Under the pieces are notes generated by a model that was not told where the DNA came from, ran no database searches, and was given only the letters and a program-made list of their open reading frames with translations. The position numbers and the translations under genes are program-made. Positions 1 to 28,779 of a DNA stretch of 31,518 nt are shown in pieces (position 1 is the stretch's first letter; each line of letters opens with the position of its first letter). Origin of the DNA: Anthoceros angustus (lineage: Eukaryota; Plantae; Anthocerotophyta). Where the stretch lies: the NCBI GenBank assembly GCA_010909165.1, contig VJWM01000370.1:1-31518 (forward strand), in the 5' to 3' direction.

Positions 1-2654
1 TCCCTCACGGGACTCCTCCGTGGCTCTCCTCGAAGTCCTCCTTCCCGATCGCCCGGTACTCCTTCGTTGGCCCCTCCTTCCATGGTGAGGTGCGGGGTGC
101 TTACCTCGATCGCATCCGCGCTCCTCGTTACGCTCCTCGGTTGCTCCTCTCGCTCCGTCATCTCCAAGCAGGGGCCACTAGGGTCCCTGTCTTTGTCCCG
201 TGGCCTTCATCTCCTTGAGCCTTCCGGTCCGTCCGTTTGCGGTGAGTCGAGGCTTCTGCCGGGAGCTCGGCGTGGTAATAGGCAAAGTCAGATCGACTTG
301 TTGGTGCCTCTTCCACGTGTGCCGATACTCCCTCGCCATAAGTGTTGGGATGGGCGTCTTTGCCGGCTTGTTGGGCCACCTCTCCTGCCCGGTTGGTGGG
401 CGGGCGTATCACGCGAGGCTGACCTCGGTCACCTCCTGCATTGCCTGTTGCTCACGCTCCACTCCGTCGTTTCTCTCCATTGCGGCTTACCGCCATGGCG
501 GCGTTCCCCGCCTTTCTTTGGTGGCGGCTTCTTTTACGCTTCCGGTGCTCGCTCCTCCGTTCATTACGGCCTTTAGCTCATGACTCCCTCTCGGCGGTCG
601 GATACCTCCGTCGCTCGGACTTCCTCCGGCTCATACAGCAGCAGCGTCCAACTCCTTGGATAGTCGCGATTTTCCTCCGTCTTGAAGGCTGACACTCTCG
701 TGCTCAGTCGTGGATTCTCTCGTTGAGAATCACTGCTGCTCAAGCGCATCTTGGGTTGTAGCTCGGCGTGTCCTTCTCCTCCATCTGCTGCCGCCTCTCC
801 TCTACTTCCTGCGGTGTACTCGGAGATCTCCTATCTCCCAGTCTTGGCCTTACGCTCCATAGCCCTTTGTCGCGGCCTTGAGAGCCTCGGTACTGCTGAC
901 TCTCTCCACGGTTCCGTCCTGCGGTGATCCGGTCGCTCTTTTGCGGAGCTCCTTCGCCGCCTTTACAGGCCTCGCCCACTTGGCTCTCGGGCCGCCTCCG
1001 CGGTCAGCTCTCTGCTTGTGCCGGGCCTCTTCCGCCTCTGCTGCGCTTCCCCCGCTGCAAGGTCCTCCGCGCTTGGGCCTCCCAGGCTTGCTTGATTTGT
1101 GCCTGGTGAAGAACCTTAACCAGTCTGCTTGCTTGGGCCTCGCGCTCCGCCACCGGCGTTTCCCTTCCTCGATCCGGCGAGGACTCCGCCTTTCCTTTGC
1201 CCCTCGGCCGCCTTCACTTGCTCTTGGGTTCCACCATCCTCCTCGGGTGGCCTCCACTTCACAGGTCTTCTCCATTTGTACCGAGACCCCAAAGCATTCC
1301 GTCCATGGCGGTGGGACTTCGCCGTGTTTCTTCCACGGCCTTGATGAGGCCCCACAAAGTCCGTAGTGGGGCCGGCATTTCTCGATCGCCAGGACCTCCA
1401 TACCCTTGATCCGGAGTAAGTCGGTGGGTTCTCGGACCTAATCGGGACCCTCGGGTCACAGTGGTGGTCAGGAGTCTCACCCTCTTGGCCCTCTTGGCCT
1501 CTAACTCCTTTGTGCCCTCTTTCTCACAGGGCTCGGAGGAGGTGAGGGGTCAGGGAGCAAGCTCTTTTGCCCCTTCACATCGGGGCAGGCCGGCTCGAGG
1601 TGGGGCTGCGCGGTGACCTCCTGCTCCTTGGGCCACGTCCCTTTGCCCCTCCTTAGCCTCTTGACCTCTTGCCACTCCGTAGGCGGGGTAAGAATCGGCA
1701 CCTTGAGGTCTTTGCGTTGGTAAGCGGCACCGTCTTCCGCCTCTTGGCTCCGTTGAGTTCGGGGCTCGGCCGTCTGGTGTTGTTGCATTGTCTGGGTGCG
1801 GGCCGCCAACGCCCTCGGCATCGGCTCCCTCACATGCGTGCTCGGAGGGCACCAAAAGGAGGAAGGGAATCGCCTCCCAAACTTCCACAGGTGGTGAGGG
1901 GTTCGCTCAGGGCGTATGGAGTCGGAATCCTCGATCGTCCTCCTCCAGTCGCTTGGTCTTGAAGGGCGACCCCCACCTCAGGCGCCACGCTCTACTTGGC
2001 GGGGCCTCCGGCCCCGGGCGCCCGCTCAAGCTCTCCCTCCTTGAGGGCTCGAAATGTCCCCATACATGAATCGGTATGGGGTCGGCCGATAAGCTTCGCT
2101 CCTTAGCTTGCGTGCCTCTGGCCCAGGCAGGCGAAGATAATCCTTCCCGGTCGCTCTCTTCCCAGGCGCATGCGAGAATACCAGCGAGTTATCACCAAGG
2201 TGATCCACCTTGGTGGCGAGTTCAATGGACAATGATCGGGCTACCGCCCTTACTCGGTATCGGCGGATCGGATATCAACCATCCGTTGGTTGTCATTGCG
2301 TTCGAGCCTCGGCATCGCGTGTGGCCCTATCTTCCCCGCCTTAAGGGGCTCGGCACCGCCCCTTCTTCCTCCTTGGGCGGTTGTAGGCCATCCTCGGGAC
2401 CTCAAGGTCCATCGCCTCGGAGTCCTCCGGAGGTTCTTGGATCGGACCTCCTTGTTGATCGCCCTTGACATCTTCGGGCAAACTCCGGACTAGGTAGCGT
2501 TGTCAAAGGTCGAGACCATTTGGAACACGTCCGGATGCCACTCCTGCACCAATTCCCACTTCCTCCGGCCGGGCCCGAAGTCCGGATAGCGCGGGTCACA
2601 ATGTTGCGCTCCACGGTCCATGGCTCCCAGTTTCCGTCGGCTTTTGGGTGCCAT
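1..2654 (-). pseudogene. Degenerate transposon-associated ORF of unknown family (copy 1): conserved N-terminal domain followed by a long charged low-complexity region
   Basis: Stitching minus-strand frames from the ATG at 2654 gives MAPK..WEPWTVERNIVTRAIR..VSTFDNAT(L)..KMSRAINKEVRSK..IIVH..TKVDHLGDNSLVF. This aligns at protein level with the plus-strand copy at 12990-13500. Downstream (2150 to 1) the frames are rich in E/R/K/G, with many frameshifts and stops. Confidence 0.5.
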
Positions 2655-4049
2655 TGCTTTCTCCTCCTCTTGTTCTGTAGGCTGGCGGTCGGCGCACGAT
2701 GTTCCTCCTTCGCGCGTTGTTGCTCCAACCTTGATGCGCCACGCTCTATGGCGCCCAAAAGATGCGAGCGGATTGCGGGCGCAAGGGGCTGAGAGGATTG
2801 CGGAGGCTGCGCGGAGGACCTCCCTCCTTGGCGCTTGTGGAAATGCTTTGGGCGGAAGGCGCCTCTTCGTTGTCCGTGCGCGAGTGCGCATGGCTTACTC
2901 GACGCTTCGCTTACTCGGCCTTCGCCGCGCGCGGCGTGAATACTGCCTATAACGGCCTCGGCAGGTTACGGTCTGGCCTCACATGCACCTCCACTCGGGG
3001 CCGTCCACGTGGCGCCGCCTCGTCATCCTCACGCCTCGCTCCTGGGTTACTTTCCTGGCGTACTTATCCTATTTTGACACAGGTGGGTTCCGGACTTATC
3101 CGTTACTCGTGGTCGGGGCTTGCCATAGTGATGGGGTCCGTTGTTCACTCCAGTCGGAGTATACTCAGCCTCGTCGGCGCTACCCCAATTTATTCCTCCT
3201 TTTCCTTATTTATCCTTCAATCCTAAAAAAAAGCAAACCCTACTTTTTCTTAACTCCCGAGGGAAGTACAGCCCACGGGCCATTGTTCCAAGCTGCGTGC
3301 ACTGCGCTCAGCGGCAAGCTTGTCTTGTGGTGGCGACCTCTTCACTTTCATGCGTTTAGTCCTTGGCGCCCGACCTTCCTGCTCACCACCGTTTTGTGCA
3401 CTTGCGAGCATCGGTGGAAAGTGTCTCGGCAATAATTTCTTGCGATAGCGGCAATAGGGATCCTTTTCGGCGGAGATGGAGAGCATCATCCGCCGGACAC
3501 TGGTCGGCTTCGTCGCCAGCCCGCCCTCGCGCCCGGCAATCGCGAAGAAGGAGCTCGCCAGGGTTGCTGCTGAGTCAGCGGATGCCTTGGATGCTCGGTA
3601 GCGTGCGAGGAGGTAGGAGGTGTTTACTTGAAATCACCACGGTGGATGGACTTGGTGCGGCTCTCGATGTTTGGGCTTGGTTCGTGGATGAGCGCCAAAC
3701 TTGGTGGGTCCTTCTTAAAGGCTGGAGAGGCAGCTGCGGACAAAGCCCGCCATAAATGACCGAGGTCGCCACCTTACGCATATTGGTGGATAGTTTTATG
3801 GAAAAGAAGGCGATGGCATAGAGCGAATTGTTGTTGACTTCGAACATCCGACATCTCGGGAATAGTGCGAACTATATCGCATCTCTTGTTATTAGCCTAA
3901 AGGAATTGAGCTTGTAAGCGGTCCATACATGCGGGGTAGTAGAGGTTTCGTTTAGTTAGGGTTTCAATGGATCGTTTCACTTCCTATCGGCCGTCCACGA
4001 TGTCCATCACGCTTCCTCCTTCGTCCTCCCTCCACCCCGTGCGGGAGTG

Positions 4050-11631: not shown

Positions 11632-11888
11632 GCCCCTCCTTCCTCCCCTCCCCCTCTCCCCTCCTCTTGCTCCTCTTATTTTCCATCTTCCTCCTCCTCC
11701 TTATAATCTCCCCTCCTCCTTTCTTTCCCCTCCTCGTCCTTCCTCCTCCTCCTCTCCTCCTCCTCCTCCTCCTCCTCCTCCTCCTACTCCTCCTCCTCCT
11801 CTACCTCATCCCTTTTCCCCTTTTCCTCCTTGCCTCTCCCTTCCTCCTCTCCTCCTCTTCCTCCTCCTCCTCTCCCCTCCTCCTCCTT
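11632..11888. repeat. Long CT-rich tract with (CCT)n microsatellite core
   Basis: About 255 nt of near-pure C/T with imperfect (CCT)n around 11741-11800. It explains the poly-P and poly-L ORFs in the ORF track. Confidence 0.92.
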
Positions 11889-11997
11889 GTCTCCGAGGCG
11901 AGTGAGCCTCGCACCATGAACTTAGACATAGGTAAATAATATTATGTTTAGGTTACAAATATATGTAAGTATATATATATACATACATAAATACGTG

Positions 11998-11998
<1 letters not shown>

Positions 11999-12046
<48 letters not shown>
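11999..12046. repeat. Compound microsatellite (TA)16(GA)8
   Basis: Read directly; flanked by degenerate TA-rich sequence at 11940-12100. Confidence 0.95.
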
Positions 12047-12047
<1 letters not shown>

Positions 12048-12409
12048 GAATATACACAACAAGTGGGCACAATATATATAGATAGACATATAAATAATCT
12101 AGAATCCTACTATACATAATCGGTAAAACAAGAGTTTTCAATGGTGTATGTGGAGCTTAAAAAACAAAACCAGATGTGGACACAAGGGTGCATTGAAGAG
12201 GGAAGGTAGATTATAAATGCATAGTTATGCAAAGGAGGCAAAATGGAAAGAGAATGACAACCACAGGGAGAGAGATAGAGTTCCTGGTTGCTATCATGTA
12301 GGAAAAGCAAGAGGGGAAGAATAAAATAGTAGCGTGAGAAGGAAACACATGTTGCAACACAAAGAGGGAAAAATTATAAAATGGGTGTCATACTAGAGCA
12401 TTAACTAGG

Positions 12410-12880
12410 AGTGTGAGGTGAAAGGAGAGACCAAAGGCAGGTTGTTAAGATGGTGAGAGAAGGTGGAGAAGAAAATCACAAACTTAACACCAATCCAATA
12501 AACTTAATGCTAAGCTCTTAATGGTGAGGTGTAAGGTCAACAGACCACTTGCATGTTGTTAAGATGGTGAGAGAAGGTGGAGAAGACTATCACAAACTTA
12601 ACACCAAGCCAACTAACTTAATGAGTGTTCCAAATGGAAAGTGTTACATGAAATTGTAACAAAGGAGTATAAGCGAGTTTGCATAGTATATGTTTGAAAT
12701 CATAAACAATGCTTGTGAGAGAGAGGGTGTACTTAGGAGGGTGAGGTGATGAGGAGAGTCGGGGTTCGTGTTAAGATGGTGACAAAATGAGAAGGGAATA
12801 GTGTCAAACTTAATACCAAGCCTACATAGCTTGTTGCAATTTGGAAGTGTAACATAAAATTGCAACAACGGTATATATAG
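12410..12880. repeat. Three diverged direct repeats
   Basis: Core gttaagatggtgagagaaggtggagaaga..tcacaaacttaacaccaa at ~12441 and ~12555 (114 bp apart, near identical), with a more diverged copy at ~12768. Copies 2 and 3 also share a downstream ggaa(a)gtgt(t/a)acat(g/a)aaattg block. Confidence 0.88.
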
Positions 12881-12989
12881 GCTGCCCTTTTCTAGTAAGT
12901 CTGGCCCTCTTCCATGAGCAGCGCGTTCGGCAGTCAAAGGAGAGTTGTCGATCATCTAGCCAAAACAGCAGACCAGGAGGCGCGCAATT

Positions 12990-13560
12990 ATGGGGCCCAA
13001 GAAGGCGGCGGAGGTCTAGGAACCATGGCGCTTGGTGGAGAGGAACATCGTCACCAAGCGCTACATCAGACCTTGGCTGGAGGAGGCGAAGTGGTGGAGG
13101 GGCCCTTTGGACATCTTCCACGGTTTGGACGTTCGATAGCGTCGCCTTGGTCCGGGAGTACGCTCGGAAGATGTTGGCGGTGGCCAACAAAGAGGTCTGC
13201 TCAAAGTCGGGGAGGACCCGGAGATGGGAGTAGAGGTCTGAGGCGGTCTACAACCGTCCGGCGAGAGGAGGTCGGGGATGTAGTTCCAGGCCCCTTAAGG
13301 TGAAGGGAAGGTGGGCGGCAAGGCGCTCTTGAGGCGAGGGGGCAGTCCTCAAATGGGTGGTTGATGTCGGACTGGACCAGGCGGGTGAGGCGGTGGCAAA
13401 GATCATCGTCCATTGGAACATGCTCACCAAGATGGACCACCTTGGTGACAATTTGCTGGTGTTCCTCCGCCTGAGAGAGGAGAAACCGGCGGGAAGAATC
13501 ATCTTGGGATCAACCGAGGAGGCAGGGGCCAGCGCCCATCGGCGCCTATATGCCGCTTAT
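12990..13560 (+). pseudogene. Second, truncated copy of the unknown TE-associated ORF
   Basis: MGPKKAAEV*EPWRLVERNIVTKRYIRP..VWTFDSVALVREYARKMLAVANKEVCSK..WVVDVGLD..IIVHWNMLTKMDHLGDNLLVFLRLREE. Homologous to 2150-2654 on the opposite strand. A TATATATA lies at ~12872. Confidence 0.55.
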
Positions 13561-14992: not shown

Positions 14993-15583
14993 CTAGGGTT
15001 TAGGTGGGGCTAGTGGGGAAGTCAGGTGGCTCCCCATGCCCAGACTCTTGATGTGCCTTTCGTGAAGCTCTCTTCCAAGAGCCTTAGTGAAAATATCTGC
15101 TGGATTGTCTGTTGTTGGCACGTATTCGAGAGTAATCTGTCCAGCCTTTATCAAGTCCCTGATGTAATGATATTCCACCTCAACGTGTTTAGTCCTTGAG
15201 TGGAATACTGGATTTTTGGCTAGACTCATTGACCCCTGATTATCCGGTTTTGATCGTAGCGAGTTGGAGTGGCAACCTAGTTCCTTTGAAGAGAAGCTTG
15301 CACCGGAGCAACTTCTGGCAGTAGCAGAAGTACCTTGTACTCGCCTCGTGCTTGGGTTATGGGTTGCTTTGCTTGGACTAGCAGTCCACACTACCATCAC
15401 AACATAATCAGAAATTGGCTTTCTACTATCCACATCACCTGCGTAATCCAAATCTGTGTAAACGTCAAGGTCGAGTGGCACACCAGGTTGGTGTTTGTAG
15501 ATGAGTCCCATATGTGCCGTTCCTTTGAGGTATCGAAATATCCTTTTAATGCTTGTCCAGTGTTCTTGTCCTGGATTTTCAAG
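14993..15583 (-). pseudogene. Copia RT C-terminal end plus RNase H
   Basis: [80 protein letters not shown], typical of Ty1 RNase H; frameshifted in the middle. Confidence 0.93.
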
Positions 15584-15584
15584 T

Positions 15585-16261
15585 GACTATGACTATGGAA
15601 ATGTTTGATGTCAAGACAGCGTTCTTACATGGCAAACTAGATACAGAGATCTATATGCAACAACCACCAGGATATGAGGTTAAGGGTTTAAAGAGGATCA
15701 TGTCTTACGTTTAATCAAAACCTTATATGGACTGAAACAGTCCGCTCTTGAGTGGAATGCAGTCTTAGATGAGGAATTACGAGCACTAGGTTTCGTCAAG
15801 TGTACCTCTGATGGAAGCCTTTATGTCTACAGAACTGGTGACATAGTATGTTACTTGGCAGTATACGTAGACGATCTTATACTCGCCTGTAATAGTCCTT
15901 CCTTCATCACCAAAATAAACGGCCTGCTAGCCACCAAGTTTGAGATGTCAAACCTCGGACCTCTACAAAGCTGTCTGGGCATTCTCATTCAAAGGGATAG
16001 AAAGAAGAGAATTATTTCTCTTACCCAGCCTAGATATCTTCTTGAGAGTGCTGAGCAGCTGGGACTCAAAGATGCCAAGCCTGTATCGACCCCACTACCA
16101 TGTGGACTTAAGCTCAGCAAATCTATGAGCCCCCAAACACAGACAGAGAAGGACCAGATGTGTTCAGTCCCTTACCGTCAGGGTGTTGGAAAGCTGATAT
16201 ATGCAGCCAATACCACTCGACCAGAAGTCGCCTTTCCTACCAGTGTGCTTTCACAGTACTT
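15585..16261 (+). pseudogene. Copia RT core (RVT_2), inverted relative to the rest of the element
   Basis: [67 protein letters not shown] on the plus strand, with a frameshift near 15690. Confidence 0.93.
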
Positions 16262-16512
16262 CAGTCTGAATATGATTCTTTGATAAGAAATGGCACTTGG
16301 GAACTTGCAAAGTTACCTCCTGGACGAAAGATGGTATCTTGCAAGTGGGTGTTCAAACTGAAGGTTAAAGCTGATGGTACCTTCGACCGATACAAAGCTC
16401 GTCTTGTAGCTCGAGGTTTTTCCCAAGTACCAGGTTTGGACTATCTTGAAAGATACGCTCCTGTCGTGAAGCTTGCCACCATTCGTACTATCTGTGCAGT
16501 GGCAGCACTCAT
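16262..16512 (+). pseudogene. Copia RT N-terminal segment, separately inverted
   Basis: [75 protein letters not shown] on the plus strand, lying downstream of the RT core it should precede. Confidence 0.93.
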
Positions 16513-16888
16513 TTGCATGAGCCTGTGCTGCTGGATGCCTGAAGTCATGTAACTGATAATAATCAGGAGCCCATCTTTCCCTTGCAGGATAACGGCGTTC
16601 AGGTAAAGGAGGCTGGTCAGGCTGTAGGTCTGCTTCACCATCACTGTCCAGAGGGACTGCAAGATCACCATCATCATCAGCAATTGCATCATCATCTGGA
16701 TCAAGGTCAAGTGGATCGGGTAAGAGGTCTAGTTGTGCAATGTCGTGAGGAGGTTACAGCTGCACAACATCAAAATCGGCTACTGCGGCCTGCTCAACAT
16801 TTTGCTATTGTACTTCCCCAGCAAGCTCCTCAGGAATGGAGTCAGGAAAAACAGTGATGTTAGGGAGGGCAGAAAAGTCAATTTCCTC

Positions 16889-17830
16889 CTATGAGGTGGG
16901 AGGAGCTCCCACTGGCGTCAAAGTACGCCCTTCATCGAAGGTTACACTGCGTGCATAAATCACCTTATTCTGAGGAACGTCATATAGCTTATAGGCTTTG
17001 ATGCCCTCAGTATATCCTATCATGAGAAATCTTTTGGCCTTTGCAGCTAACTTCATCCGCTTCTCCTTTGGAATGAAGGCATAGGCGATACAACCAAAAG
17101 TTCGAAGATGGAGAATAGCGGGCTTTCTGCCAAAGAAGGCCTCATAGGGGGTTTGTCCGGCAACGGCAGTGGTAGGTAGCCTGTTTCTCAAGTAAACTGA
17201 TGTCATAAGGGCCTCAGCCCAATAAGGAAGTGGCAATGAAGCTTGAGAAAGCAAAGAAGATATCATCTCCTGTAATATGAGGTTCAAGCGTTCAGCGACA
17301 CCATTCTGCTGTGGTGTATAGATGACGGTAAGTTGTCGCCCAATGCCCTCATCTGCACAATAGGCCTGAAATTCGTTAAAGGTGAATTCACCACCATTGT
17401 CAGATCGTAGGGTCTTCAACTGTTTTCCAGTCCATCTCTCTGTGTATTTCATGTAGTCCTTGAACAGGCAGAAGCATTCACTCTTGGCTTTCAAGATGTA
17501 AGCCATAACAAATCGTGTCTTGTCATCGGTGAATGTAAGGAAGTATCTGCCACCGCCAAAGCTGTGACAGTGGACCACAGATGTCAGTGTGGACGAGCTC
17601 AAGAACATCGGAAGCTCGGTGAGGAGTCTTGTTCTTGAAGGCTGCTTGGTGGCGTTTGGACAACACACAGGCTTCACACAGTGGTAAGGGTGGCAAAGTG
17701 CCAATTTTTCCATCACTGTACAGGTCACTAGTTGCTAGCTTCTGTAGCTTAGAACTGTGAGGGTGACCTAAGCGTGCATGCCATAACTTAGCCTTCTCCA
17801 CTTGTTTTGTAGAGGCTACTGAAGACTGAG
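16889..17830 (-). pseudogene. Copia integrase (GAG-pre-integrase HHCC, rve core, C-terminal region)
   Basis: LWHARLGH..CEACV zinc-binding motif; DDE triad in VHTDICG, RSDNGGEF and QNGVAER; HLRTFGCIAY..IGY..KAYKLYD..RSVTFDE. Frameshift near 17570. Confidence 0.93.
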
Positions 17831-18039
17831 AAGCTAAGTGTGTTTGGGCAATGCCACTGTGTCTGTGCAAATGGAATAGATCAAGATCAGATGATCCATA
17901 AGCTAAGACCTTGCGGTGATCGAATGCATCTATAACCTGACATTCTGTTGGAGTGAATAGTATATGACTATTATTGTCCAAGTTAAGCTTTCCGACAGAA
18001 ATGAGATTTCTTGTCATCTCAGGGACGTAGTACACATCT

Positions 18040-18230
18040 GTGAGAGACAGTGTGATCCTGAAGGGACAGGAAGACTCACCGTGCCTATGCCAGGAGACAC
18101 GAGTGATCTATCGTCGCCCAGGTAAACAAACTGATCTTTTACTGGCTTATATCTGACGAATGCATTTCTATCAAAGCATATGTGCGCTGTTGCACCTGTG
18201 TCTAAGTACCATTCACGTAATGGCCTGACA
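18040..18230 (-). pseudogene. Copia aspartic protease
   Basis: EWYLDTGATAHIC motif followed by VYLGDD..GIGTV. Confidence 0.88.
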
Positions 18231-18329
18231 TCTGTCTTTGCTGATAGACAGGTGGGAAGGAAAGAAGGACGTGCAAACTCCCTGGTCCCTACCGTTAGGG
18301 CTGAAGGAGGAGATTGCTTTTTCACCACT

Positions 18330-19261
18330 AAGTGTGTCTCAGAAGTGGAATTGCCCTCCTTGCGAGGTATTCCGGCCTGCAGCTTCTTCCGAAATTTCCC
18401 AATGGCCTGGAATTTGGCACCAGTTGCATTTTCCATTCTTCTTGGGTTTCTTCTATGATGGAGCTCGCTGTGAGCTACCAGCACCTGAGGTATTAGGTTC
18501 CGCTTCCAAGAAGGTGAGAGTTGGTCGCCCTTCACTTGTTCTCCAGAAGGAAGAGTTGAACGAACTACCTCTGAAGTTAGGCTTTCCGCCTTTACCTTGC
18601 TGCTTGCCAGCACGCCTATTGGGTCCTCTTGTAGCTTCTTCCTGAAGAAGAGCTCCCACTAACTCAGCAAATGTTGTGCCAGGAAGATCAACTTTCGCTG
18701 CCTTTGCAAGTTTCTCAGCCTGAAGCTGAGAAGCATTATAAGAGGTCACAAAATGTGACCAGGAGTCTGGGAGAGAGATCATGAAATATAGTGTAAGCAT
18801 ATCATCCTTGACAGTTTCATTAGTGGCACTCTCCAGCTTGGAGACAAGTGTCCTGAAATGGCCAACGCGCTTTTCGACTGATTCACCATCTCTCATTTTG
18901 CAGTTCTGAATATTTCGGAGAGCGGCCATCTGGCTAATAGTATTACTGCCAGAGTAAAGATCCTGAAAACGAGACCAGATGTCGGCTGAAGTGGAGCAAC
19001 CACAGGTCTGCCTTAGCATATCGGAGGTCAAGCCACTCCAGATCAGGTACATGGCAGCTTGATCCTTGGTGTGCCATGCCTCCTGTAATATCTTTTCGGC
19101 AGTTGTGGGGTCTTTGGATGAATCGTGGGCAGGGAATTTATCCTCCCCTAGAGCTTTTTTCCAAACCTTCTTATTTTGTAATGCTCCCCACATGCGCATA
19201 ACCCAGATATCATAGTCACTTTAAAACCATCCCCACCCATATTAGATGAAGGGTCAGCCAT
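18330..19261 (-). pseudogene. Copia gag (Retrotran_gag_2/UBN2-like) with damaged CCHC zinc knuckle
   Basis: ATG at 19261, frameshift to DYDIWVMRMWGAL..W..D..A..LIW..IWSRFQDLY..MISLPDSW. In-frame TAG at 18453, then KCNWCQIPGHW with the final Cys lost. Confidence 0.88.
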
Positions 19262-19419: not shown

Positions 19420-20157
19420 TCACAAGGGATAAGCAGGGTTAGCAAGTCTGTAAAAACCCTGAGGTATAGCAGTCTGCTGTGTTTCCTTTTGCGAGATTTT
19501 CTCCCTTCTCTGTTCCCATCTGTTATAAGCGTATGTAGCACAAGATGGACACGAGTTAGGAGTTTCAAATTTATTAGTACCCCTTGTCCTCTGCGCACCT
19601 TTTTGGGCTGTTGCTCGAAATTGTGGATTTCGCAGCACTTCAGGCTTTATCAAGGTGAGCAATTTGTAATCCACATGAGAGATCTTCTCTCTCAATTCCT
19701 GTATGTCTACGCCTATAGATGCTATGCTCCTATTCAGGTTTGTATAGCATCTATCCACATTCTGTGCAAGTGCCTCGATTCTGTTTACTAACGTGCTGAC
19801 TGAGATTTGTGGTGCAGCATGTGTGGTTAGAAAACCTCGAGGCTGGCCATTTCCGTCAAAAGCGCGCTGGACGCGAATCTCAGGAAGGTTGTGTGGATTT
19901 ATGGGTGGAGGCGCGAAGACTAGCTGTGGCGCCTCTTCACGAAAAAGGGCTTCAACAATCGAGTTGAAGGATTCTTGCAATTCTGAGAATTGTGCAGGAT
20001 GTGTTTGTTCTCTTACAGCCCATTCGTAAATGTGTCGATGAAGCTGTTCAGCGAACATTAGCCTGTTTTGTCCCCGTCGTGGAACCTGTCTTTGTACGAT
20101 GCGCTCTACACAGTTAGGCTCCCACTGCCTGGCATAATCTTCTGCCATTTGTGACAA
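19420..20157 (-). CDS. Orphan 245-aa ORF with a predicted coiled coil
   Basis: Uninterrupted reading frame with protein-like composition; heptad-like segment LVNRIEALAQNVDRCYTNLNRSIASIGVDIQELREKISHVDYKL; AT-rich leader upstream. No family recognised. Confidence 0.5.
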   Translation of the reverse strand: MSQMAEDYARQWEPNCVERIVQRQVPRRGQNRLMFAEQLHRHIYEWAVREQTHPAQFSELQESFNSIVEALFREEAPQLVFAPPPINPHNLPEIRVQRAFDGNGQPRGFLTTHAAPQISVSTLVNRIEALAQNVDRCYTNLNRSIASIGVDIQELREKISHVDYKLLTLIKPEVLRNPQFRATAQKGAQRTRGTNKFETPNSCPSCATYAYNRWEQRREKISQKETQQTAIPQGFYRLANPAYPL

Positions 20158-20950: not shown

Positions 20951-21612
20951 TTACAAGGACCTGTTGACGAGGTTGGAGGATCTGCTCATGAGGGCATAGG
21001 TCTGATGGGCACTCTCCTGGATGTCTTGGAAATTGTCCTCCAACTGAACATTAGACAGGCTGACCTTGTGTGCTCCACCACCAGCTTCGGCCATCCGTTT
21101 CAGAATCTCAGTATTTGATGTCCCAAAACTCACGGTGTAGAAGCTCATTGTAGGCACGTTCTCCTTCAGTCTTTTCACAGCTTCCACGGGATCTCCACCT
21201 TCTTCACTCTGACCATCACTGAGAAAGATGACTGTAGTGCTCTCCCTCGTCATCCTTGCATCAGTCTTATTGATCAGTCTCTGTACCCCATTCACCGCGT
21301 TCTCGAAGTTTGTCCCAGCTTCTGGATGTTGACTTAGCAATCGGCTCTTCAACTTCCGGTAGAATCCCAGGTTCAGGTGCTCATGGGCATCGAGAAGCTT
21401 GATCTTCAGCGAGAAGAGGATGACTGAGATGTAGTCCACTACAGTGTAGCTGGTGGTATCCTCGGCCTCCAGAGCACGGTTACTTAGAAACTTCAGCAGA
21501 GCTTCAAAGACACAGCCTAGCCGGTTGTTGTGATGCCGGGCAAAGGCATAAACTCTGGCCTGATATCTTGCTTTGCCATGGACCGGGACCTGTCTATGAC
21601 AAATATCATATG
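20951..21612 (-). other. von Willebrand factor A (VWA) domain
   Basis: MIDAS DxSxS in HMIFVIDRSRSM, T in GTNF, D in VIFLSDG, plus FYTVSFG and LKRMAE..GG. One frameshift near 21541. Confidence 0.9.
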
Positions 21613-22139
21613 GTTGTACACTAGCTCATGCTGACAGCTGAAGTAGTGGCCATCGGTGCTCACATATCCCGTGGGATCAGGCGACATGTCAACCCGCTCA
21701 TGCCACTGTCTGAGTTTGCAATAAGATCTGCGGCCGTTGGCATACGCATGGAAGAGCTGAGAATCAAACTCTCCAGAAAAGGAGTTGTCATTACCGTGGT
21801 CTTCTGATGACGGGCAATAGTGGTTACAGCCAGCAAAATATTGTTGCTCCCTTGCATTGTAAGGATCCTTGAATCCCATCTGCTCGAAAAAGGCGGCATG
21901 CGTAAGCTCGTCCTTGGGAACATCGAAATTTGGGCCATATCTCCTTGTTTCGTGCCTTGCTCCATCAAAGAGTTTAGCTGCACAGACACCACCAGTTTGC
22001 CCACATGGAATCAAGTGTATGTGACCACGGCCTTGTTTTCGGCAGTACATGCTGCACAATTCTGCCATGCCTGATTCGCCCCAAGAATACTTCCTATCCA
22101 TTACATCGATATCCTCCTCCTCCGCAACGAAGCTCATTT

Positions 22140-22980
22140 CTCGCATGTTGCCATGGGTGGTGTCATGAAGTCCTGGGTGCCCCATTGGCAATCTGCAGAA
22201 GTAGCCGCATGAGCCACATTTGGCGTCACATAAGTGCACAACCGAGAGATTTGAGGAGTGACAATGCGATCCCTCGTGAGATCTCTGGAATGCTGGAATC
22301 ATCACGGAACACTTCTTTCTGACCCCATATTGCTGGGCAACAGTTTCATACTGAAATTCTGATCGCAAGCCGTGAAAGGTATTGTCATCCCTCAATCTCG
22401 TCACCTCTGTCTCCACGTCACAGTTGCCTGCCACTTCACAAAGCTCTGGGCATGGATGCTCATTGCCACAAAGGTGATCAGCATCTGGTTGCATAGAATG
22501 GAAGTGATCCGACGAACACTTATAATTGCAGCCCGAAACAACACAGCTTTCCAAGCATCGTTTTTCATCACAAGCATGCTTATGCTCCCGAATTTCTTGG
22601 GGTGGGCAGCCTTCCATAGAAAAGGAACAGGAGTTCATACACGAAGTCAGTGAACATGGCTCCCGACAGAGGTGGCGCACAGAATTACACCTGTGCTCAC
22701 CTTTGTGCCCTGGTCTCGCAGCACATTTGCTGTTGCAGCCAAGTGTGCGGGCATCAAACACACAAGCATGCCTACACTCATGTTGCTTTGTGTTACAGTC
22801 ATGGAAGCCTGTATGCCCTGCCACATCACTACAACCCCGAATATCAGTGCCCGCAGCCCCATCTGCTCCACAATAGGTACATTTCTGTAGGCATTTGTGG
22901 TTTCCTTGACAAGAGTGACTGGCTGCATGCGATTTCCTCATTATGCACTTCAAGAAACAACGCTCACATTTTGCTCCACA
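22140..22980 (-). other. Cys/His-rich repeat array (about 7 units, NF-X1-zinc-finger-like)
   Basis: Recurrent C-x3-C..(G)H-x2-3-H-x-C..H-x-C-x3-C units, e.g. CNSKCAARPGHKGEHRCNSVRHLCREPC and CGYFCRLPMGHPGLHDTTH. Confidence 0.8.
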
Positions 22981-23549
22981 AAGTATTAGGCCATGTTCAA
23001 TGCTCACAAGCATGGCACCAGCTTCCATTTCTAGCTTCTGAACGTCACTGTCCCCAGTGAACTCCCTGGCATTGACTTCAAGCCACTTACGCACGCGCAC
23101 TCTCCTTCGAGCTACCAAACATGCCAAGAACCTCTCAAATGCTAAGAACCATGCGTCCACATCGAAGTCATCACGATCAACCTGGTTTCTAAATGCATCT
23201 CAAGCGGTGGAAGAACACCTGTGAAATCTTCCGAGGTTGAGACAAGCTTGAGCCTTGTATCCTCCAAAGTGAACACAAGTCTTGTGCCAGAGAAGTCCAT
23301 CTCTACAGAGACGTCTTCAATCTCTTCCATCGTGTCCAGATTTGTCAACACACCATTGTTTGCACAGCCCACATTAACAGCCTGCTTTAGATGCTTGCAG
23401 AATGCCCAAACGCAGCGCTTCCGCTTTGAGTCTATAGGGCCCCAGTCTTTGGTTGATACCTGTGCTATGAAGAGCTTCAAGTCTCTGAGAAAGTTGGCTC
23501 CATCCTTATAGCTTGGCTTCAACCTTCTCAAAACATCTGCAACATCACC

Positions 23550-24240
23550 AATGCTACCAAAAAAGGACGGCAGCAAAAGATCTTCCATCGGCAGGATTAC
23601 CAGTCCACTGCCGTACAGTTTGGACAAAAATGAACTGCCATTCCGCTTACAGCAATCGTCGATTTTGTCCTGGAAGTCATCACAGATGTCATCAGCATTA
23701 TTACCAGCGACATCCTTCAGCACTATGCAGAGCATTCCCTTGAAAAGCTGCTGGTCATCCTGAACCAAAGCCACTGCGTTCTGTAGCCTATGCAGGATCC
23801 GCTCCATCTCTTTATCGAAGCTGCGATCCTGCATTCCACAATGATGTTTAGATAAGGGGGAAATGCCAGCCAGACTTACACATGCACACTTCCCAATTTT
23901 TGGTTGATAATGGAAACAAGCACAAATGGACACCGTCATGACCAACTAAAGAACATTCAAAATTCAAAGACATGCCTTTTTATTGTAGATGGTGATGCTG
24001 CTAACAGCAGCACTCAGTAGTGACAGCAGAGTATCCTCCTGCGCAGTCCGTTCAGGGCTTTCAAGACCCTCAAAGTCCAATAAAATGTATAGGCACCCAT
24101 CGTCTCCTTGCCGAGAAGACAGCCAGATACCATCAGTACAACGAACAGCGGCCACATCAAAGAGCGAACCGAATAGATGGTTGAGTAGGTAGGACTTGCC
24201 GCTGCTCTGCTTCCCCATTGATGAAACTACCTTGACCCCA
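23550..24240 (-). other. P-loop GTPase domain (dynamin-superfamily GB1/RHD3/VLIG type)
   Basis: G1 GKQSSGKS (24215-24192), G2 RCTDGIW, G3 LLDFEG (~24077), G4-like IVLKDV (~23717), after VKVVSSM. Confidence 0.9.
23829..23975 (-). other. Predicted GC-AG intron (147 nt) inside the GTPase domain
   Basis: Donor AAG|GCATGT and acceptor TGCAG|GAT. Removal joins TIYNKK to DRSFDKEMER in frame and removes a stop. The interval is T-rich. Confidence 0.7.
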
Positions 24241-26253
24241 CCCTCCAGTTTCCGATTAAATCATCGACAAAAGCCAAACCTCATGGTCTTGACTAAAGCC
24301 AACACATTAGCACTCTCAGATTCCACGGAGACTTGTCTGAGCCCATCAGAGCATGAAGTCAACCCGCTGCGCTCAGCTCGAGCAATCTGAATGGGCACCA
24401 GACACACGAGATCCTGGATCCACTTACTCATACTAACGGCACAAGATTCATGTGTGTCCACTCCAGAGAGCAGAAACTGATCCACATCGCATGATGAGTA
24501 GGAAATAGTCCAGTCAGAAAAGTTCTACCCCTGGAGTTTTCCAGGTTTCCTATGAGTTGCTCAATATGCTCAATGGCCCTGTCTATGCCTTCAGCCAATC
24601 CCATATGCAGAACAGTAAACTTCACAAGCTTCTTACGATGAACAAGGGGGCTTGTTACTGCATATTTCTCAAAAGTGAGCGGCACATAAGCCAAGGGTGA
24701 GTATCTCCTCCCTCTCTCGTTGTCTCTTATCACCCCGGTGTCTTGCCTTCTCAGCCCGGATGTCTGTGGGACTGTTACAACAGCAGAAAAGACAGTTCCT
24801 GGATCACTGCTATCATGAAGAATCAGCTGCAGCTGTGACCCAAACAAAACTGTTCGCGCAAACACCTTCTAGCCTGTCTACCTTCATATCAGCCAGGACA
24901 ATGGACTTGATTGCAGACACTGTGTCAGCACCCAACAGATACACATGCACAACAATGCTGCTATTTCCATGTTCTGTCGTCTGGTCAGCAAGCACCAACA
25001 GGCATGACCCATCAGGTGTAAGACAGGTGGCATCAGGGTAGATTGGAAAGGCAGTTTAATGTGTTTACCATCCTTGCACTTGCCATCTTCCAGTACCCAA
25101 AGGTTATGTTCAGCATCAGCCACAACAATTTCATGGCCACTTGCAAGCTTTCTAGGAACAAACTCCATAAATCTTACATTAAGTGGCCTTGACCAAATAT
25201 TTTTACCCATAGCCTTGCCTACATCAATTTCTCTAGGGCTCATCTGCAGTCGACGGAATTGCTCATCAAAATAAGCCACCCGGATGATTCCATCAGCTTG
25301 GTCATAACAGGCCACAAACCGTTTCCCTTCACTGAAGCAAAGAAGATCACAACCTTTTCTTAAGATCATAAGGCACTTTGGTTCAGTGGCGAAGTGGCTG
25401 CCCAGATCTTTGTACATCCGAATTTCGACATACTTCCTGCTCTCCTTGTAACAAATGACGAAAGCCAACACCTGTTGATTTTCAAGGAGGAATGCCTTCG
25501 ACAATACTTCCACTTCCTTATCCAGCTCCATACAGGGTTGCTGATATGAGTAGAGCCGTGGAACAACCACATGATCAGCTTTACTTGACAGCTTTTCCAA
25601 AGATACCTTCCTTGGTCTCAGTTCCAAACTGCGCCAGGAAATGGTATCTGGATTCATCACAGGGTAGTTGTACTTAATACTGACTAGCCGCTGACTATCC
25701 CATGGCCTATCAAAGAGCCCAAAAATATCCTGCTGCGTCTCGTGACTTTGGAGAAAGCATCTCTGAGTTGCAAAGTTTGTCTCGAGCTGCCGCCAGAGAC
25801 ATTCTTACATGATGTGCCTTTGAGTTTGTCAAGTAGTTCTGTTTCCTTCAGCTTGCAAGACTGCTCAAATAGTTCGGTGGCCTGATTCATCTCAAACTCA
25901 ACATTGCCTCGTAAGGCATGTCCAATTTCTTTGTGAATTAAGTCCTGAATTCGTCCCAAGAAACCTTCTCGGCAGCCTTATATCTCTGAAAGAAAACCGC
26001 CACAACTGCTGGCTTGATCACTTTCACCCTCTGCAAGCTGGTTGGTGAACCGAAAAATCCATTGAACACATTGTTCACGAACACAGCAGGATCTTCAATA
26101 TTGCACCCAAAGCTGCCTGGAGAATCTAGCATAATACTTGCAAATTCTGCCTTCTTCTGTAGCTTAAGGAGTGATATATCCAGACATGGCTGCAGCCACA
26201 ACTTCATGCGAGATATGTGGAGGTTGCATTCTCGTCTATAGTGAAGCGACGAC

Positions 26254-26469
26254 CTGGGAACTGATTAATACCCACTGGGAGCCCTGCGTGGACAAGCCCT
26301 CCTCTGATATTCTTGTCAGTCGGGAAAAATCTAACTGAATACACCTGCCACAGGCCGATGCGTTTTCAGTTAACATGCCATCGTGTAAAGGACATCCATC
26401 ACGTACAATCTCTCTTGCTCACTAGCCTACTTTCCAAGGGCTGCATGCTATGATCCCTGAGTTTCCTAC
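26254..26469 (-). other. Predicted GT-AG intron (~216 nt)
   Basis: Donor AG|GTAGGA and acceptor TTCCCAG|G join ORF 26466-26843 in frame to ORF 25938-26207. Alternative nearby splice sites exist (donor at 26510, acceptor ~26236). Confidence 0.5.
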
Positions 26470-28779
26470 CTTGTTCCACTGAATGAGCAAGGTTGCAAGC
26501 TGGAGGATACCTGATTGGAGCCACCCTGTGAAGTAATTGGACGGAGAGTAACCCTCTCGGTGTACTGCACAGGCCCTAATCCTTTATTAGCACCTTCGAG
26601 GACGAACAGAGTCGACACTTCTGGGTCAGATTGGAAAGCAGCATGTGACTCAAGATCGAGCCCCTTTCTGCGTAGGCACAGTATCTCATTTCTATCCTTG
26701 CAGACCAGGGATATACGTGACCCAAAGAAAAGCAGCTTGTTTGGACCACTACCACTAACGCTGGTCCCCGTGTTAAAATATTTACAAACTTCACCCTCCA
26801 GAATTTCAAACACTTCGTCTTCTGAAGTAGGATGGACTGCCACAGCCTGCTGACAGGCTCATGATTTCTGAAGAGGTTTTCCTCCCACGGACACATGAGC
26901 AACAGGTAGTCTTCAAGACTCCTAGTAAAAATCTTAAGCAGCAGCTTGCTTCTTCCTCAGTTGTAGCTCTGAGTCTGCGGAGCTGAACTGTTGCCTCGGC
27001 CTCATGTCTTTTTGAGACTCCTCAACTGCTTCCATGCATCCATCCACTCCTCCTGGAGTCGTGGTTGCACCCAGAAACAACACAAACTCAACATCTTCCA
27101 AGCTACTGAAGTCAAGGCTGTACTTACTCATGCTAGTTCTAATAAATTCCTGAAGCTTGTCCGACGCCATATTCCTCTGCTCATCCTGCCTCCTAGAAAC
27201 TGTGTTTGAAGCGTTCACGTTGCCGATAAGCAAAGCAACTGAGTGAAGACCTCACAATAGGAAACTGGACGATGGCTCGTGCTCAAAGGATTCTCTAAAG
27301 CCCTTACGCAGACTAACATCATCCTCAGCTGGTTGGGGAAAATTCCAAGCCCGCGGACGACACCGCAGTGACCTGACACTGATGGAGAGGCCAGAAAGTG
27401 CGTCACATCAGTGTTTGCAACGCAAATATAGACAATGTTGCAGAGTTCCACCAGATAGCGGACAAAGTTGCAGCAGATGCTTTTCGCTGAAGCCTCTGCT
27501 TCGGCTTCTTCATGATGCCAATAGAACAAGTACAGCTTGCTTCCTGCGTGCAAGCATAGATGCCCGGTCCCTCCTCCATTTTGGATTCCGTTTCACTATC
27601 TATATTGATCTGAAGATAGTGGATGACTCTCTGCAACAGAGTCTTGTTTCCGAAGAAGCCTACACAGCAGAATTCAGAACCCTCAAGAAGAGAGGGATCC
27701 AGCTTGATCATCTTTGTCGATGTTGTAGATGGAATCAAGTCTTGGAAGAAGAGAAGAACCTCTTCACGACAAAGGACCACTTTCTCCACAAAACTCCAGT
27801 CCTGCTTGTCACTTTCCATGTGAAGGAGAGTACAGCCTACTGTTGTGGTGGAAAGCCACACCATTTGAGGGCGACGTCGCAATGAGCTCATGATGTCTTT
27901 CCCACTCTAAAATTGCAAGACCAAGGGGCCTACTGCTCATGAACGAAACGATGAGAGTCAGAAATACAGAGGCAAGCACATTACTCCTCAAGAATGTGTC
28001 TAATCAGTCGTGCACAGCCTCGCCCAAGAAACCCAGCCTCAAAACTCCCACCCACCGAGAGACCTGTATCACACACGCATGAATGGCATCAGACTCATTG
28101 CAGCAAGGACTTACAGGAGTTTCGCTCAGCCTGCCCAGCAGGGATCACAAGGGGAGAGAGATACCCCATGCCGCAGGCAGCAGGGATCGAGCAGACACGA
28201 CCAGCATAGACAGGCATTGGCCCTGATATTGAAGAATCCGGCTCACAGGAAGGGTCGAGGCAGGAGACGAGCTGCCATAAAGTACTGTTTACACCGTTCT
28301 GTGGAGCCTGCCGAGGTGGGGCCCCAGCGTGGATCAGATTCACAGTCACAAAGCAAGGGGCCTTTTCTGTCATGTTGTTACCTGTCTCGTCTGTGTGTCC
28401 TCCCAGGCTCGCACCTCCCCTCTCCAACAACCACTTTTGACAGAAGGAGAAATAGTGGGCTCCATCAGATGGGATTCCACTCGGAATCCTGGAGAGAGGG
28501 CTGAAAAAGCAGAGCACGTGCCAGGAGGCTCGCCCAATACCGAAAGGTCAGATCAGATTCCTGTATGTCGGTAGCAAGGCCGAACACGCCACGCAGCCTG
28601 AAAGCCTCTCGCACGCTGCATCCTCAAAACTTGCGTGCTGGTCTGGGTCTGCAGAGATTTGCGAGACCAGAACATGAGGTTTCTATGTTTCCTGCGATAA
28701 AATCACTGCTTCACGACAGCAGAATCTCTCAGGCACTTCATGCCTCACCGAAGTCCGGACATGCTACAACGAGGATGAG

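What the first reader, a model, noticed from the sequence alone, without database searches (positions are those of the whole stretch)
20951..27900. Giant uncharacterised GTPase-zinc repeat-VWA protein: candidate immune or membrane-remodelling system
The reconstructed ~2200-aa product combines an N-terminal domain, a possible beta-repeat region, a dynamin-superfamily GTPase with features of GBP (LLDxEGL..SS..IYN), RHD3/Sey1 (QSSGKS.LLNHLFG..GIW) and VLIG (RCT.G), a helical region, about 7 Cys/His units and a MIDAS-intact VWA domain. GBP and VLIG GTPases are established cell-autonomous immunity proteins, and VWA domains often bind targets via a metal ion. A sensor-plus-GTPase effector role is therefore a reasonable inference. 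I recall similar architectures only as unannotated hypothetical proteins and know of no functional description. The TE-rich setting and signs of decay would fit a fast-turnover defence gene family.
Basis: partly seen in the sequence, partly recalled or inferred. Interest (0 to 1): 0.8.

Follow-up and report, generated by a model that had tools for sequence, protein, structure and literature searches.

The report
Giant GTPase-zinc-VWA gene, frame-broken copy
This stretch holds one copy of a 7-kb plant gene for a giant, unstudied switch protein related to animal defence GTPases. The gene is real and a near-identical RNA reads it intact, so the roughly 13 single-base breaks in this copy are either sequencing errors or a recently dead duplicate.

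Summary
Minus strand 27891..20951 is one gene, collinear with 2100-2400 aa proteins of Selaginella, mosses, liverworts, ferns, conifers, red algae, amoebae, fungi and an acoel.

- **Architecture:** N-terminal alpha/beta domain, long helices, NHL/WD40-like beta-propeller, GBP/RHD3/VLIG-type G domain with G1-G4 kept, helical part, about 480 aa Cys/His module (42 invariant Cys/His, no Pfam or PDB relative), and a VWA with a full MIDAS.
- **Transcript:** Spliced RNA contigs confirm two introns (166 nt GT-AG, 147 nt GC-AG). One contig runs from the G domain to the start of the VWA.
- **Frame breaks:** The window copy carries about 13 single-base frame breaks. Applying the 12 length differences reported for near-identical RNA from the closest species opens a single 1573-aa frame.
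- **Errors or decay:** I put consensus errors in an expressed gene at about 60% and a real young pseudogene at about 40%. Other genes of this assembly have reported error frameshifts, but DNA-like contigs share six of these breaks.
- **Function:** An immune role is plausible (lineage-specific expansions, variable accessory domains, GVIN1/GBP analogy) but untested.

The scan found this family before at eight or more other loci of the same genome, so this locus adds RNA and structure evidence, not a new discovery.

The parts
20951..27891 (-). Whole gene: first ATG at 27891 to stop codon at 20951-20953. About 2200 codons after removal of two introns.
   Evidence: Collinear tblastn with P0001/P0151/P0003. 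Family-profile map.
27395..27831 (-). Conserved N-terminal alpha/beta domain (family-profile positions 51-198). It holds the degenerate P-loop-like motif VGFFGNKT at 27663-27640. One frame break lies near 27550-27530.
   Evidence: In the model of homologue P0151 this part aligns to GBP1/Sey1p/atlastin G domains at Z 13-14 over about 210 aa. That is a lead, not proof.
25690..27394 (-). Weakly conserved, mostly helical linker (long helices in the homologue model). It contains intron 1 and frame breaks near 26851, 26230, 25960 and 25790, plus one between 27395 and 27218.
26343..26508 (-). Intron 1, 166 nt, GT-AG.
   Evidence: Skipped in RNA contigs of X2 (organism A) and X10 (organism B). Retained in X1 (table 5).
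24524..25684 (-). Beta-propeller region (family-profile positions 641-1048). Frame breaks at 25044 and 24854.
   Evidence: Homologue model: Foldseek WD40 E 3e-8; VIA Brat NHL Z 16.2, 259 aligned residues.
23976..24512 (-). Pre-G segment and first part of the G domain. G1 GKQSSGKS at 24215-24192, switch-I RCTDGIW at 24143-24123, G3 LDFEG at 24080-24063. The exon ends ...IYNKK.
   Evidence: Pfam GBP/RHD3/URGCP hits. Motif coordinates. Alignment A3.
24261..24263 (-). In-frame TGA, 14 codons upstream of the P-loop. It is created by a local frame shift between 24267 and 24240.
   Evidence: The RNA-type indels read GFCDDLIGNW here, matching the family consensus G[LF]Y[DE]....W.
23829..23975 (-). Intron 2, 147 nt, GC-AG, phase 0, between ...NKK and DRSFDKE.
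   Evidence: Skipped in X2 record 11. The contigs of X10 end at its borders. Family-profile positions 1229 and 1230 are adjacent across it. Sequence read.
23187..23828 (-). Second part of the G domain (G4-like IVLKDV at 23726-23709) and helical region. A local shift lies at 23417/23396 and a frame break at 23201.
21520..23199 (-). 560-aa open frame. It comprises a helical hairpin, then five tandem Cys/His units of about 37 aa (from 22983), then a second Cys/His-rich beta part, then the first VWA strand.
   Evidence: 840 relatives at E<=1e-3. 42 invariant Cys/His. AF2 pLDDT 86. No Pfam hit in 48 members. No PDB relative.
20954..21600 (-). VWA domain. MIDAS DxSxS at 21594-21580, T at 21313-21311, D at 21217-21215. 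A frame break at 21541 lies between the DxSxS motif and helix 1.
   Evidence: Pfam VWA 31.2 bits. Conservation. Indel.

Best explanation
**What it is (shown).** The locus is one copy of a multi-copy land-plant gene for a roughly 2200-aa soluble protein of an old eukaryotic family. From N to C terminus the protein has:
- an alpha/beta domain that may be a dead G domain;
- long helices;
- an NHL/WD40-like beta-propeller;
- a GBP/RHD3/VLIG-type large G domain with all nucleotide-binding motifs;
- a helical part;
- a family-specific zinc-type Cys/His module;
- a VWA domain with a complete metal site (MIDAS).

It is one transcription unit with two introns. A near-identical mRNA in the closest species is spliced and open for at least 1573 codons.

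**State of this copy (inferred).** The roughly 13 single-base frame breaks are more likely consensus errors of the assembly (about 60%) than real lesions of a young pseudogene (about 40%).

**How it most likely works (inferred by analogy).** Like GBPs and GVIN1, the G domain would dimerise on GTP binding and drive assembly of the protein into oligomers or coats. The propeller and the VWA metal site would hold a target or partner. The zinc module would act as a rigid scaffold. A role in cell-autonomous defence or conflict is the most likely biological setting, at about 35-40%.
For: **One gene with this architecture.**
- Collinear with full-length homologues.
- Pfam domains in the window and in homologues.
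- G motifs conserved.
- MIDAS conserved.
- Propeller fold in the homologue model.
- Cys/His module modelled at pLDDT 86 with 42 invariant Cys/His.
- No transmembrane segment.

**Expression and splicing.** Contigs of X2 and X10 skip both introns, and X2 record 11 spans 21417-24295.

**Intact RNA.**
- Applying the 12 length differences reported for X2 and removing the introns opens one 1573-aa frame from 25804 to 20954.
- That reading restores family-consensus residues.

**For consensus errors.**
- Eight of the ten frame-changing differences are bases missing from the window.
- In 25826-26900 the RNA differs from the window by 1 substitution but 3 indels (table 8).
- Window-identical variants are present in the RNA at 21289-21446 (tables 3 and 8).
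- Same-genome follow-ups report proven error frameshifts (I did not verify these).

**For a defence-type role.**
- Lineage-specific expansions in Cryptomeria, Ceratopteris and Convolutriloba, and in this genome according to earlier notes.
- Variable accessory domains: SAM, RING, B-box, AAA, C2, kinase.
- No angiosperm among 103 named hits.
- GVIN1 forms an antibacterial coat (bioRxiv 10.1101/2025.03.24.645074).
Against: **Against consensus errors.**
- Contigs of X1, labelled DNA by guess and from the same sample as X2, lack the bases at 21541, 23201, 23417, 24240/24267, 24525 and 24854, just like the window.
- X1's own private substitutions are mostly synonymous, 8 of 12. X1 therefore looks like a real, accurate copy.
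- The breaks are not in long homopolymers and are not enriched near CG/CHG.
- Window-private substitutions are 10 nonsynonymous to 3 synonymous. That fits neutral decay as well as it fits error.
- The setting is rich in transposon remnants.

**Against the functional inference.**
- No experiment exists on any family member.
- Expansions and patchy distribution are circumstantial.
- The propeller and N-terminal folds were modelled on a 50%-identical homologue, not on this copy.
Confidence: 0.6

Rival explanations
1. The window copy is a real, recently inactivated pseudogene. It would be a young duplicate sitting among transposon remnants, while a 98-99% identical paralogue supplies the intact RNA.
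For: - X1 contigs share six of the frame-breaking states with the window.
- Window, X1 and X2 are three different sequences, so at least two close copies exist in organism A.
- Window-private substitutions are 10 nonsynonymous to 3 synonymous, against 4 to 7 on the X1+X2 lineage.
- The breaks are not homopolymer-type.
- Copia remnants lie directly downstream.
Against: - There are about as many indels as private substitutions, and they are almost all deletions. That is unusual for natural decay.
- In 25826-26900 the RNA is identical to the window except for 1 base and 3 indels.
- No private substitution makes a stop codon in 1573 codons.
- All 42 invariant Cys/His, the G motifs and the MIDAS are kept.
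- The assembly is reported to have error frameshifts elsewhere.
- X1 contigs may be bubble-popped mosaics, and the library type of X1 is only a guess.
Confidence: 0.4
2. The protein is a housekeeping membrane-fusion or membrane-remodelling GTPase of the RHD3/Sey1/atlastin type, not a defence protein.
For: - The P-loop GKQSSGKSYLLNHLFG is closest to RHD3/Sey1, and Pfam RHD3_GTPase scores 40.3 bits.
- Sey1p and atlastin appear among the fold matches.
Against: - No transmembrane segment in eight homologues or in the window's in-frame pieces.
- The C terminus is a VWA domain, not a membrane hairpin.
- The gene is multi-copy with lineage-specific expansions and is patchily distributed.
- The RHD3 Pfam score is below its cut-off of 42.4.
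Confidence: 0.08
3. The protein acts on RNA or on protein quality control in a TRIM-NHL or NFX1-like way. The propeller would bind RNA, and the zinc array and VWA would recruit ubiquitin machinery, with the GTPase as regulator.
For: - The best propeller matches are the RNA-binding NHL domains of Brat, Mei-P26 and NHL-2 (Z 15.6-16.2).
- Some family members carry RING or B-box domains.
- The top, weak Foldseek row for the Cys/His module is 7zw0 chain sh of the 'FAP-80S complex' (E 0.34). From memory I take that chain to be the NFX1-type protein Fap1.
Against: - Six- and seven-bladed propellers match many unrelated families at similar Z.
- Pfam found no NHL, NF-X1, RING or B-box domain in this copy or in its closest relatives.
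- A profile of the Cys/His module finds no solved NFX1-type chain.
Confidence: 0.12

Closest known systems
VLIG/GVIN giant GTPases (mouse VLIG-1, human GVIN1) and URGCP
   Same: - Giant soluble proteins with a VLIG-type large G domain. Pfam URGCP_GTPase hits the window piece at 38.4 bits and homologue P0023 at 62.6 bits, above the cut-off of 55.
- UniProt names a Riccia relative 'VLIG-type G domain-containing protein'.
- GVIN1 is predicted to have two large G domains. This family may have a dead N-terminal one plus a live central one.
- GVIN1 was also long filed as a pseudogene because of in-frame stops.
   Different: - The window's pieces and four full-length homologues gave no GVIN1_C (PF26772) row in the Pfam scans.
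- VLIG/GVIN proteins are not known to have a beta-propeller, a Cys/His array or a VWA.
- The family is found in plants, algae, fungi and protists rather than vertebrates.
- No interferon context.
Guanylate-binding proteins (GBP1-7; plant GBPLs)
   Same: - Pfam GBP is above its cut-off (30.8 against 21.1 bits).
- The best solved sequence relatives of the homologue's G domain are GBP1, GBP2 and GBP5 (E 3e-5).
- Shared G1, switch-I Thr and DxEG motifs.
   Different: - The P-loop lacks the GBP catalytic arginine (GKQSSGKS against GLYRTGKS).
- No GBP helical C-terminal domain or CaaX box was detected.
- The protein is about four times larger, with other domains.
RHD3/Sey1p/atlastin ER-fusion GTPases
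   Same: - The P-loop and the following LLNHLFG are RHD3-like, and Pfam RHD3_GTPase scores 40.3 bits.
- Fold matches to Sey1p and atlastin.
   Different: - No membrane anchor.
- The score is below the cut-off of 42.4.
- Different architecture and copy number.
TRIM-NHL proteins and NFX1-type zinc-finger proteins
   Same: - A coiled-coil-like helical part followed by an NHL-like propeller.
- Some relatives have RING or B-box domains.
- The repeated H-x-C-x3-C pattern recalls NF-X1 fingers. That resemblance is from my own knowledge and is only a lead.
   Different: - No Pfam NHL, NF-X1, RING or B-box domain in this copy.
- No profile match to solved NFX1-type chains.
- Those proteins have no GTPase and no VWA.

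Membership tests
Dynamin-superfamily large G domain (GBP/RHD3/VLIG branch) | G1 P-loop GxxxxGK[ST] | tested here: met
   GKQSSGKS at 24215-24192. G21, Q23 and G26 are nearly invariant in the family.
Dynamin-superfamily large G domain (GBP/RHD3/VLIG branch) | Switch-I threonine and G3 DxxG | tested here: met
   RCTDGIW at 24143-24123 and LDFEG at 24080-24063. They align to T75 and DTEG of GBP1 through homologue P0151.
Dynamin-superfamily large G domain (GBP/RHD3/VLIG branch) | G4 of the [TI][LV][RK]D type | tested here: met
   IVLKDV at 23726-23709. The family consensus is IKDV, with D138 and V139 nearly invariant.
Dynamin-superfamily large G domain (GBP/RHD3/VLIG branch) | Curated Pfam threshold reached | tested here: inconclusive
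   On the 84-aa exon piece GBP scores 30.8, above its cut-off of 21.1. RHD3_GTPase scores 40.3 (cut-off 42.4) and URGCP_GTPase 38.4 (cut-off 55), both below. Family member P0023 reaches 62.6 bits for URGCP_GTPase.
Dynamin-superfamily large G domain (GBP/RHD3/VLIG branch) | GTP hydrolysis stimulated by G-domain dimerisation | not testable with these tools
   Needs purified protein.
VLIG/GVIN family proper | GVIN-type C-terminal domain (PF26772) and the vertebrate GVIN architecture | tested here: not met
   No such Pfam row for the window pieces or for four full-length homologues. The C terminus is Cys/His module plus VWA instead.
RHD3/Sey1/atlastin | C-terminal transmembrane hairpin | tested here: not met
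   The highest Kyte-Doolittle 19-residue means are 1.2-1.9, inside propeller strands, with no C-terminal hydrophobic pair. This is a crude hydropathy scan, not a dedicated predictor.
VWA domain with MIDAS | Pfam VWA above cut-off, plus DxSxS, T and D metal ligands | tested here: met
   VWA scores 31.2 against 23.8. DRSRS at 21594-21580, T at 21313-21311, D at 21217-21215. All three positions are conserved in at least 80-90% of relatives. In the window a frame break at 21541 separates DxSxS from the rest.
NF-X1-type zinc finger | Match to PF01422 or to a solved NFX1-type protein | tested here: not met
   0 of 48 members hit it at E<=1. The profile search of PDB sequences finds none. There is only one weak Foldseek row, 7zw0_sh at E 0.34.
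NHL/WD40 beta-propeller | Closed six- or seven-bladed propeller fold | tested here: met
   Tested on the model of homologue P0151 residues about 665-1000 (pLDDT about 85-90). Foldseek probability 1.00, E 3e-8. VIA Z 16.2 with 259 residues aligned to Brat NHL. The window aligns to this part at 25684-24524, but its own sequence was not folded.

The most novel reading that the evidence does not exclude
The family is a pan-eukaryotic system of giant self-assembling GTPases that has been lost in angiosperms. In seed-free plants and conifers it would work as a non-NLR, cell-autonomous defence or symbiosis-control machine. The propeller and the VWA metal site would capture a microbial or damaged-self target. 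A GBP/GVIN-like GTP-driven coat, stiffened by a previously undescribed zinc module, would then form around it.
Probability: 0.2. Interest if true: 0.8.

Novelty: new variant of a known kind. Interest (0 to 1): 0.45.

Why it matters
**If the defence reading is right.** Plants outside the flowering plants would possess a second, GTPase-based arm of cell-autonomous immunity, related to animal GBP/GVIN coats. The family also carries a conserved Cys/His module of about 480 aa with no Pfam model and no solved relative. It is testable because transformable hornworts, mosses and liverworts carry it.

**For this locus.** The practical lesson is narrower. Frame breaks in this assembly cannot be read as pseudogenisation without read-level checks, because the RNA reads the gene intact.

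Tried and rejected
- **Cys/His module as a known zinc-finger family.** Pfam gave nothing in 48 members. The PDB profile search gave nothing. Foldseek gave E>=0.34. VIA matched only the leading helical hairpin. The Atlas feature and shape searches gave only family members or noise.
- **Breaks as errors at methylated cytosines**, as suggested for other loci of this genome. 3 of 10 indels lie within 2 nt of a CG, against a background of 16% (P=0.20). The CG-or-CHG test gave P=0.45. This is neither supported nor excluded.
- **Breaks as long-homopolymer errors.** The contexts are runs of 1-3 bases.
- **Fetching near-identical copies from other assemblies.** The best protein in the 5.8-billion collection is 51% identical, so no independent DNA of this locus could be fetched.
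- **Transmembrane anchor.** None found.
- **Intact LTR pair around the neighbouring copia element.** None found.
- **Rfam families in the window.** None found.
- **N-terminal domain by language-model search.** No usable hit.
- **Joined or repaired protein.** I gave none to any search or folding tool. All searches used window pieces by reference or stored homologues. The RNA-type indels and intron removal were applied only inside scripts, to count open frames and classify substitutions.


Full report
**1. What is in the sequence**

On the minus strand, between the ATG at 27891 and the stop at 20951-20953, the open stretches follow one another in changing frames.

Pfam places a GBP/RHD3/URGCP-type G domain on 23967-24218 and a VWA on 20954-21439. 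The 560-aa open frame 21520-23199 has no Pfam family.

A full HMMER search with that 560-aa piece found 840 cluster representatives at E<=1e-3, and 215 at E<=1e-30. Many are 2000-2600 aa long and match at their C-terminal quarter.

The best named ones are Selaginella 'VWFA domain-containing protein' (50% identity) and Cryptomeria 'uncharacterized protein'. They show the same Pfam order, G domain then VWA.

tblastn of these proteins on the window is collinear from 27831 to 20993, covering residues 53-2171 of 2174. A 16-sequence profile maps in order along the locus.

**2. Gene structure and RNA**

Two public runs of the closest species (organism A: X1, guessed DNA; X2, guessed RNA; same sample) hold about 60% of the locus's words. 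Runs of a second species (organism B) are 90-95% alike. All runs were laid as assembled contigs, not raw reads.

- X2 and X10 (organism B, guessed RNA) skip 166 nt at 26343-26508 (GT-AG).
- X2 skips 147 nt at 23829-23975. The cut can slide by up to 3 nt, and the GC-AG, phase-0 placement is the one that fits the sequence. X10's contigs end at this intron's borders.
- X1 and X9 (organism B, guessed DNA) retain both stretches.
- The second intron lies exactly between family-profile positions 1229 and 1230, between ...IYNKK and DRSFDKE. Land-plant homologues read NKKDFHLDKE at this point.
- X2 record 11 is one contig from 21417 to 24295. The G domain, helical part, Cys/His module and the start of the VWA therefore sit on one spliced RNA.

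**3. The frame breaks**

Compared with X2, and mostly also with organism B, the window lacks single bases at 21541, 23201, 23417, 24240, 24525, 25044 and 26851. It lacks two bases at 23396 and two at 24854, and has one extra base at 24267. In-frame 3-nt differences lie at 21006 and 21615.

Applying these 12 reported differences and removing the introns turns the best open stretch from 560 aa into one frame of 1573 aa, from 25804 to 20954. It also opens a 176-aa stretch across intron 1.

The corrected reading restores family-consensus residues. For example, GFCDDLIGNW stands where the window has the in-frame TGA, and DSKRKALRLGILRKHLKQAV replaces the window's reading.

Further breaks exist near 26230, 25960 and 25790. 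More lie near 27540 and between 27395 and 27218.

**4. Errors or a pseudogene?**

For consensus error:
- The differences are nearly all missing bases.
- In 25826-26900 the RNA differs from the window by one substitution but three indels. No natural divergence looks like that (table 8).
- RNA variants identical to the window exist at 21289-21446 and around 25296-25340, at depths like the other variant.
- No window-private substitution creates a stop codon in 1573 codons.
- All conserved motifs are intact.
- Earlier follow-ups on this same genome report proven or probable error frameshifts in ordinary genes. I did not verify those.

For a real pseudogene:
- X1 shares six of the states with the window.
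- X1's private differences are mostly synonymous, 8 of 12, so X1 looks like a genuine accurate copy.
- Window-private substitutions are 10 nonsynonymous to 3 synonymous, against 4 to 7 on the X1+X2 lineage.
- The contexts are not long homopolymers and are not enriched near CG/CHG.

Caveats:
- The library type of X1 is a guess.
- Logan contigs pop bubbles and can be mosaics.
- Window, X1 and X2 are three different sequences, so at least two close copies exist.
- Only 40 of 514 substitution differences were listed, chosen by support.

I put errors at about 60% and a real young pseudogene at about 40%.

**5. Domains**

*G domain.* G1 is GKQSSGKS, switch I is RCTDGIW, G3 is LDFEG and G4 is the IVLKD type. 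All sit at nearly invariant family positions. The closest solved sequences are GBP1, GBP2 and GBP5 (E 3e-5). The P-loop lacks the GBP arginine and reads like RHD3/Sey1. UniProt calls a Riccia relative 'VLIG-type G domain-containing'.

*Cys/His module.*
- The AF2 model of the window's own 560 aa has pLDDT 86.
- 42 Cys/His are invariant and about 23 more are nearly so in 48 sequences.
- Residues 74-260 form five tandem units of about 37 aa, each with eight ligands (H-x3-H-x-C-x3/4-H-x-C-x3-C-xn-C-x3-C). A second Cys/His-rich beta part follows, up to the VWA.
- No Pfam model hits any of the 48 members.
- No solved chain matches by profile. Foldseek finds nothing at E below 0.34. VIA matches only the leading helical hairpin.

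*VWA.* The DxSxS, T and D ligands of the MIDAS are present and conserved.

*N-terminal half*, modelled on Selaginella P0151 residues 1-1170 (pLDDT 68).
- Residues 665-1000 form a beta-propeller (Foldseek E 3e-8; VIA Z 16.2 to Brat NHL with 259 aligned residues).
- Residues 300-660 are long helices of low confidence.
- About 210 residues, within a range spanning 44-1169, align to GBP1, Sey1p, atlastin-1 and GBP2 G domains at Z 13-14. I take the 50-300 alpha/beta domain to be the main contributor.
- The motif at the P-loop position, VGFFGNKT in the window (27663-27640), lacks GK[ST] in all relatives.
- This suggests a dead second G domain, as predicted for GVIN1. The range reported by the aligner is wide and the domain was not folded alone, so this is a lead only.

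No transmembrane segment is present.

**6. Family**

Named relatives come from these groups:
- Land plants: lycophytes, mosses, liverworts, ferns, Ginkgo, Taxus and Cryptomeria. Cryptomeria has many copies, with neighbouring locus tags on one chromosome.
- Algae and protists: Galdieria, dinoflagellates, Phytophthora, amoebae, a malawimonad.
- Fungi: Rhizoctonia, Diversispora, a chytrid.
- Animals: the acoel Convolutriloba, with several copies.

No angiosperm is among the 103 named hits. This is suggestive, not proof.

Accessory domains vary:
- an N-terminal SAM domain;
- RING and B-box domains;
- C2 and kinase domains;
- a C-terminal RING;
- three C-terminal AAA modules.

In a tree of the Cys/His region the window sits inside a land-plant clade (support 90/99) on a long branch. 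Copies of Ceratopteris, conifers, Galdieria and Convolutriloba cluster by lineage. This shows vertical descent with repeated local expansion.

Earlier notes of this scan list eight or more other loci of the family in this genome. They include a six-copy tandem array and an intact head-to-head pair.

**7. Function**

Nothing is known experimentally. Four full-text searches found no paper on this architecture.

The nearest characterised systems are GBPs and the giant GTPase GVIN1, which forms a coat on cytosolic Burkholderia.

By analogy I propose GTP-driven self-assembly on a target held by the propeller and/or the VWA metal site. The zinc module would serve as a rigid scaffold.

The defence setting is the most likely (35-40%). 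It rests on copy-number dynamics, accessory-domain shuffling and patchy distribution. Rivals are an RNA or ubiquitin-linked role (about 12%) and an RHD3-like membrane role (about 8%, disfavoured by the lack of an anchor).

**8. Verdict**

This is a real, expressed member of an unstudied giant-GTPase family. The architecture claim is confirmed and refined. The 'decay' is unresolved and probably partly artefact. The immune reading is reasonable but untested.

The family is already present, unnamed, in public protein sets, and was found repeatedly by this scan. The locus itself is therefore of moderate interest.

Noticed in passing
window 15000-19200 (minus strand): Remnant of a copia-type LTR retrotransposon. 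It carries gag (18456-19199), Pol beta-barrel (18017-18613), gag-pre-integrase (17526-18035) and integrase plus SH3-like domain (16892-17728). The polyprotein is split over at least four frames, and no LTR pair was found in the window. Its frame breaks could serve as a local control for the assembly-error question.
   Followed up: partly
window 23829-23975: The second intron uses a GC-AG splice site (AAG|GCATGT...GCAG|G), and the spliced form is present in RNA contigs.
   Followed up: yes
window 21289-21446 and 25296-25340: The RNA run X2 holds two variants at similar depth, one identical to the window and one not. At least two nearly identical copies or alleles of this gene are therefore transcribed in organism A (tables 3 and 8).
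   Followed up: partly
window 11635-12030: A long (TCC)n/(CCTCCT)n tract at 11635-11887 is followed by (AT)36 at 11959-12030. Composition changes sharply there, with GC 0.39 and GC skew +0.32 in 12001-13000.
   Followed up: no
window 1-3000: A GC-rich stretch (0.61-0.63) with strong negative AT skew (-0.47 to -0.23). Its ORFs of 150-183 aa have no Pfam family.
   Followed up: no
window 19420-20157 (minus strand): A 245-aa ORF lies directly downstream of the gene's stop codon and has no Pfam family. It may belong to the neighbouring transposon.
   Followed up: no
homologues P0022, P0023: Some family members extend beyond the VWA. P0022 adds three AAA plus AAA_lid_6 ATPase modules, and P0023 adds a RING finger. 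A giant GTPase fused to AAA ATPases is an unusual two-engine architecture.
   Followed up: no
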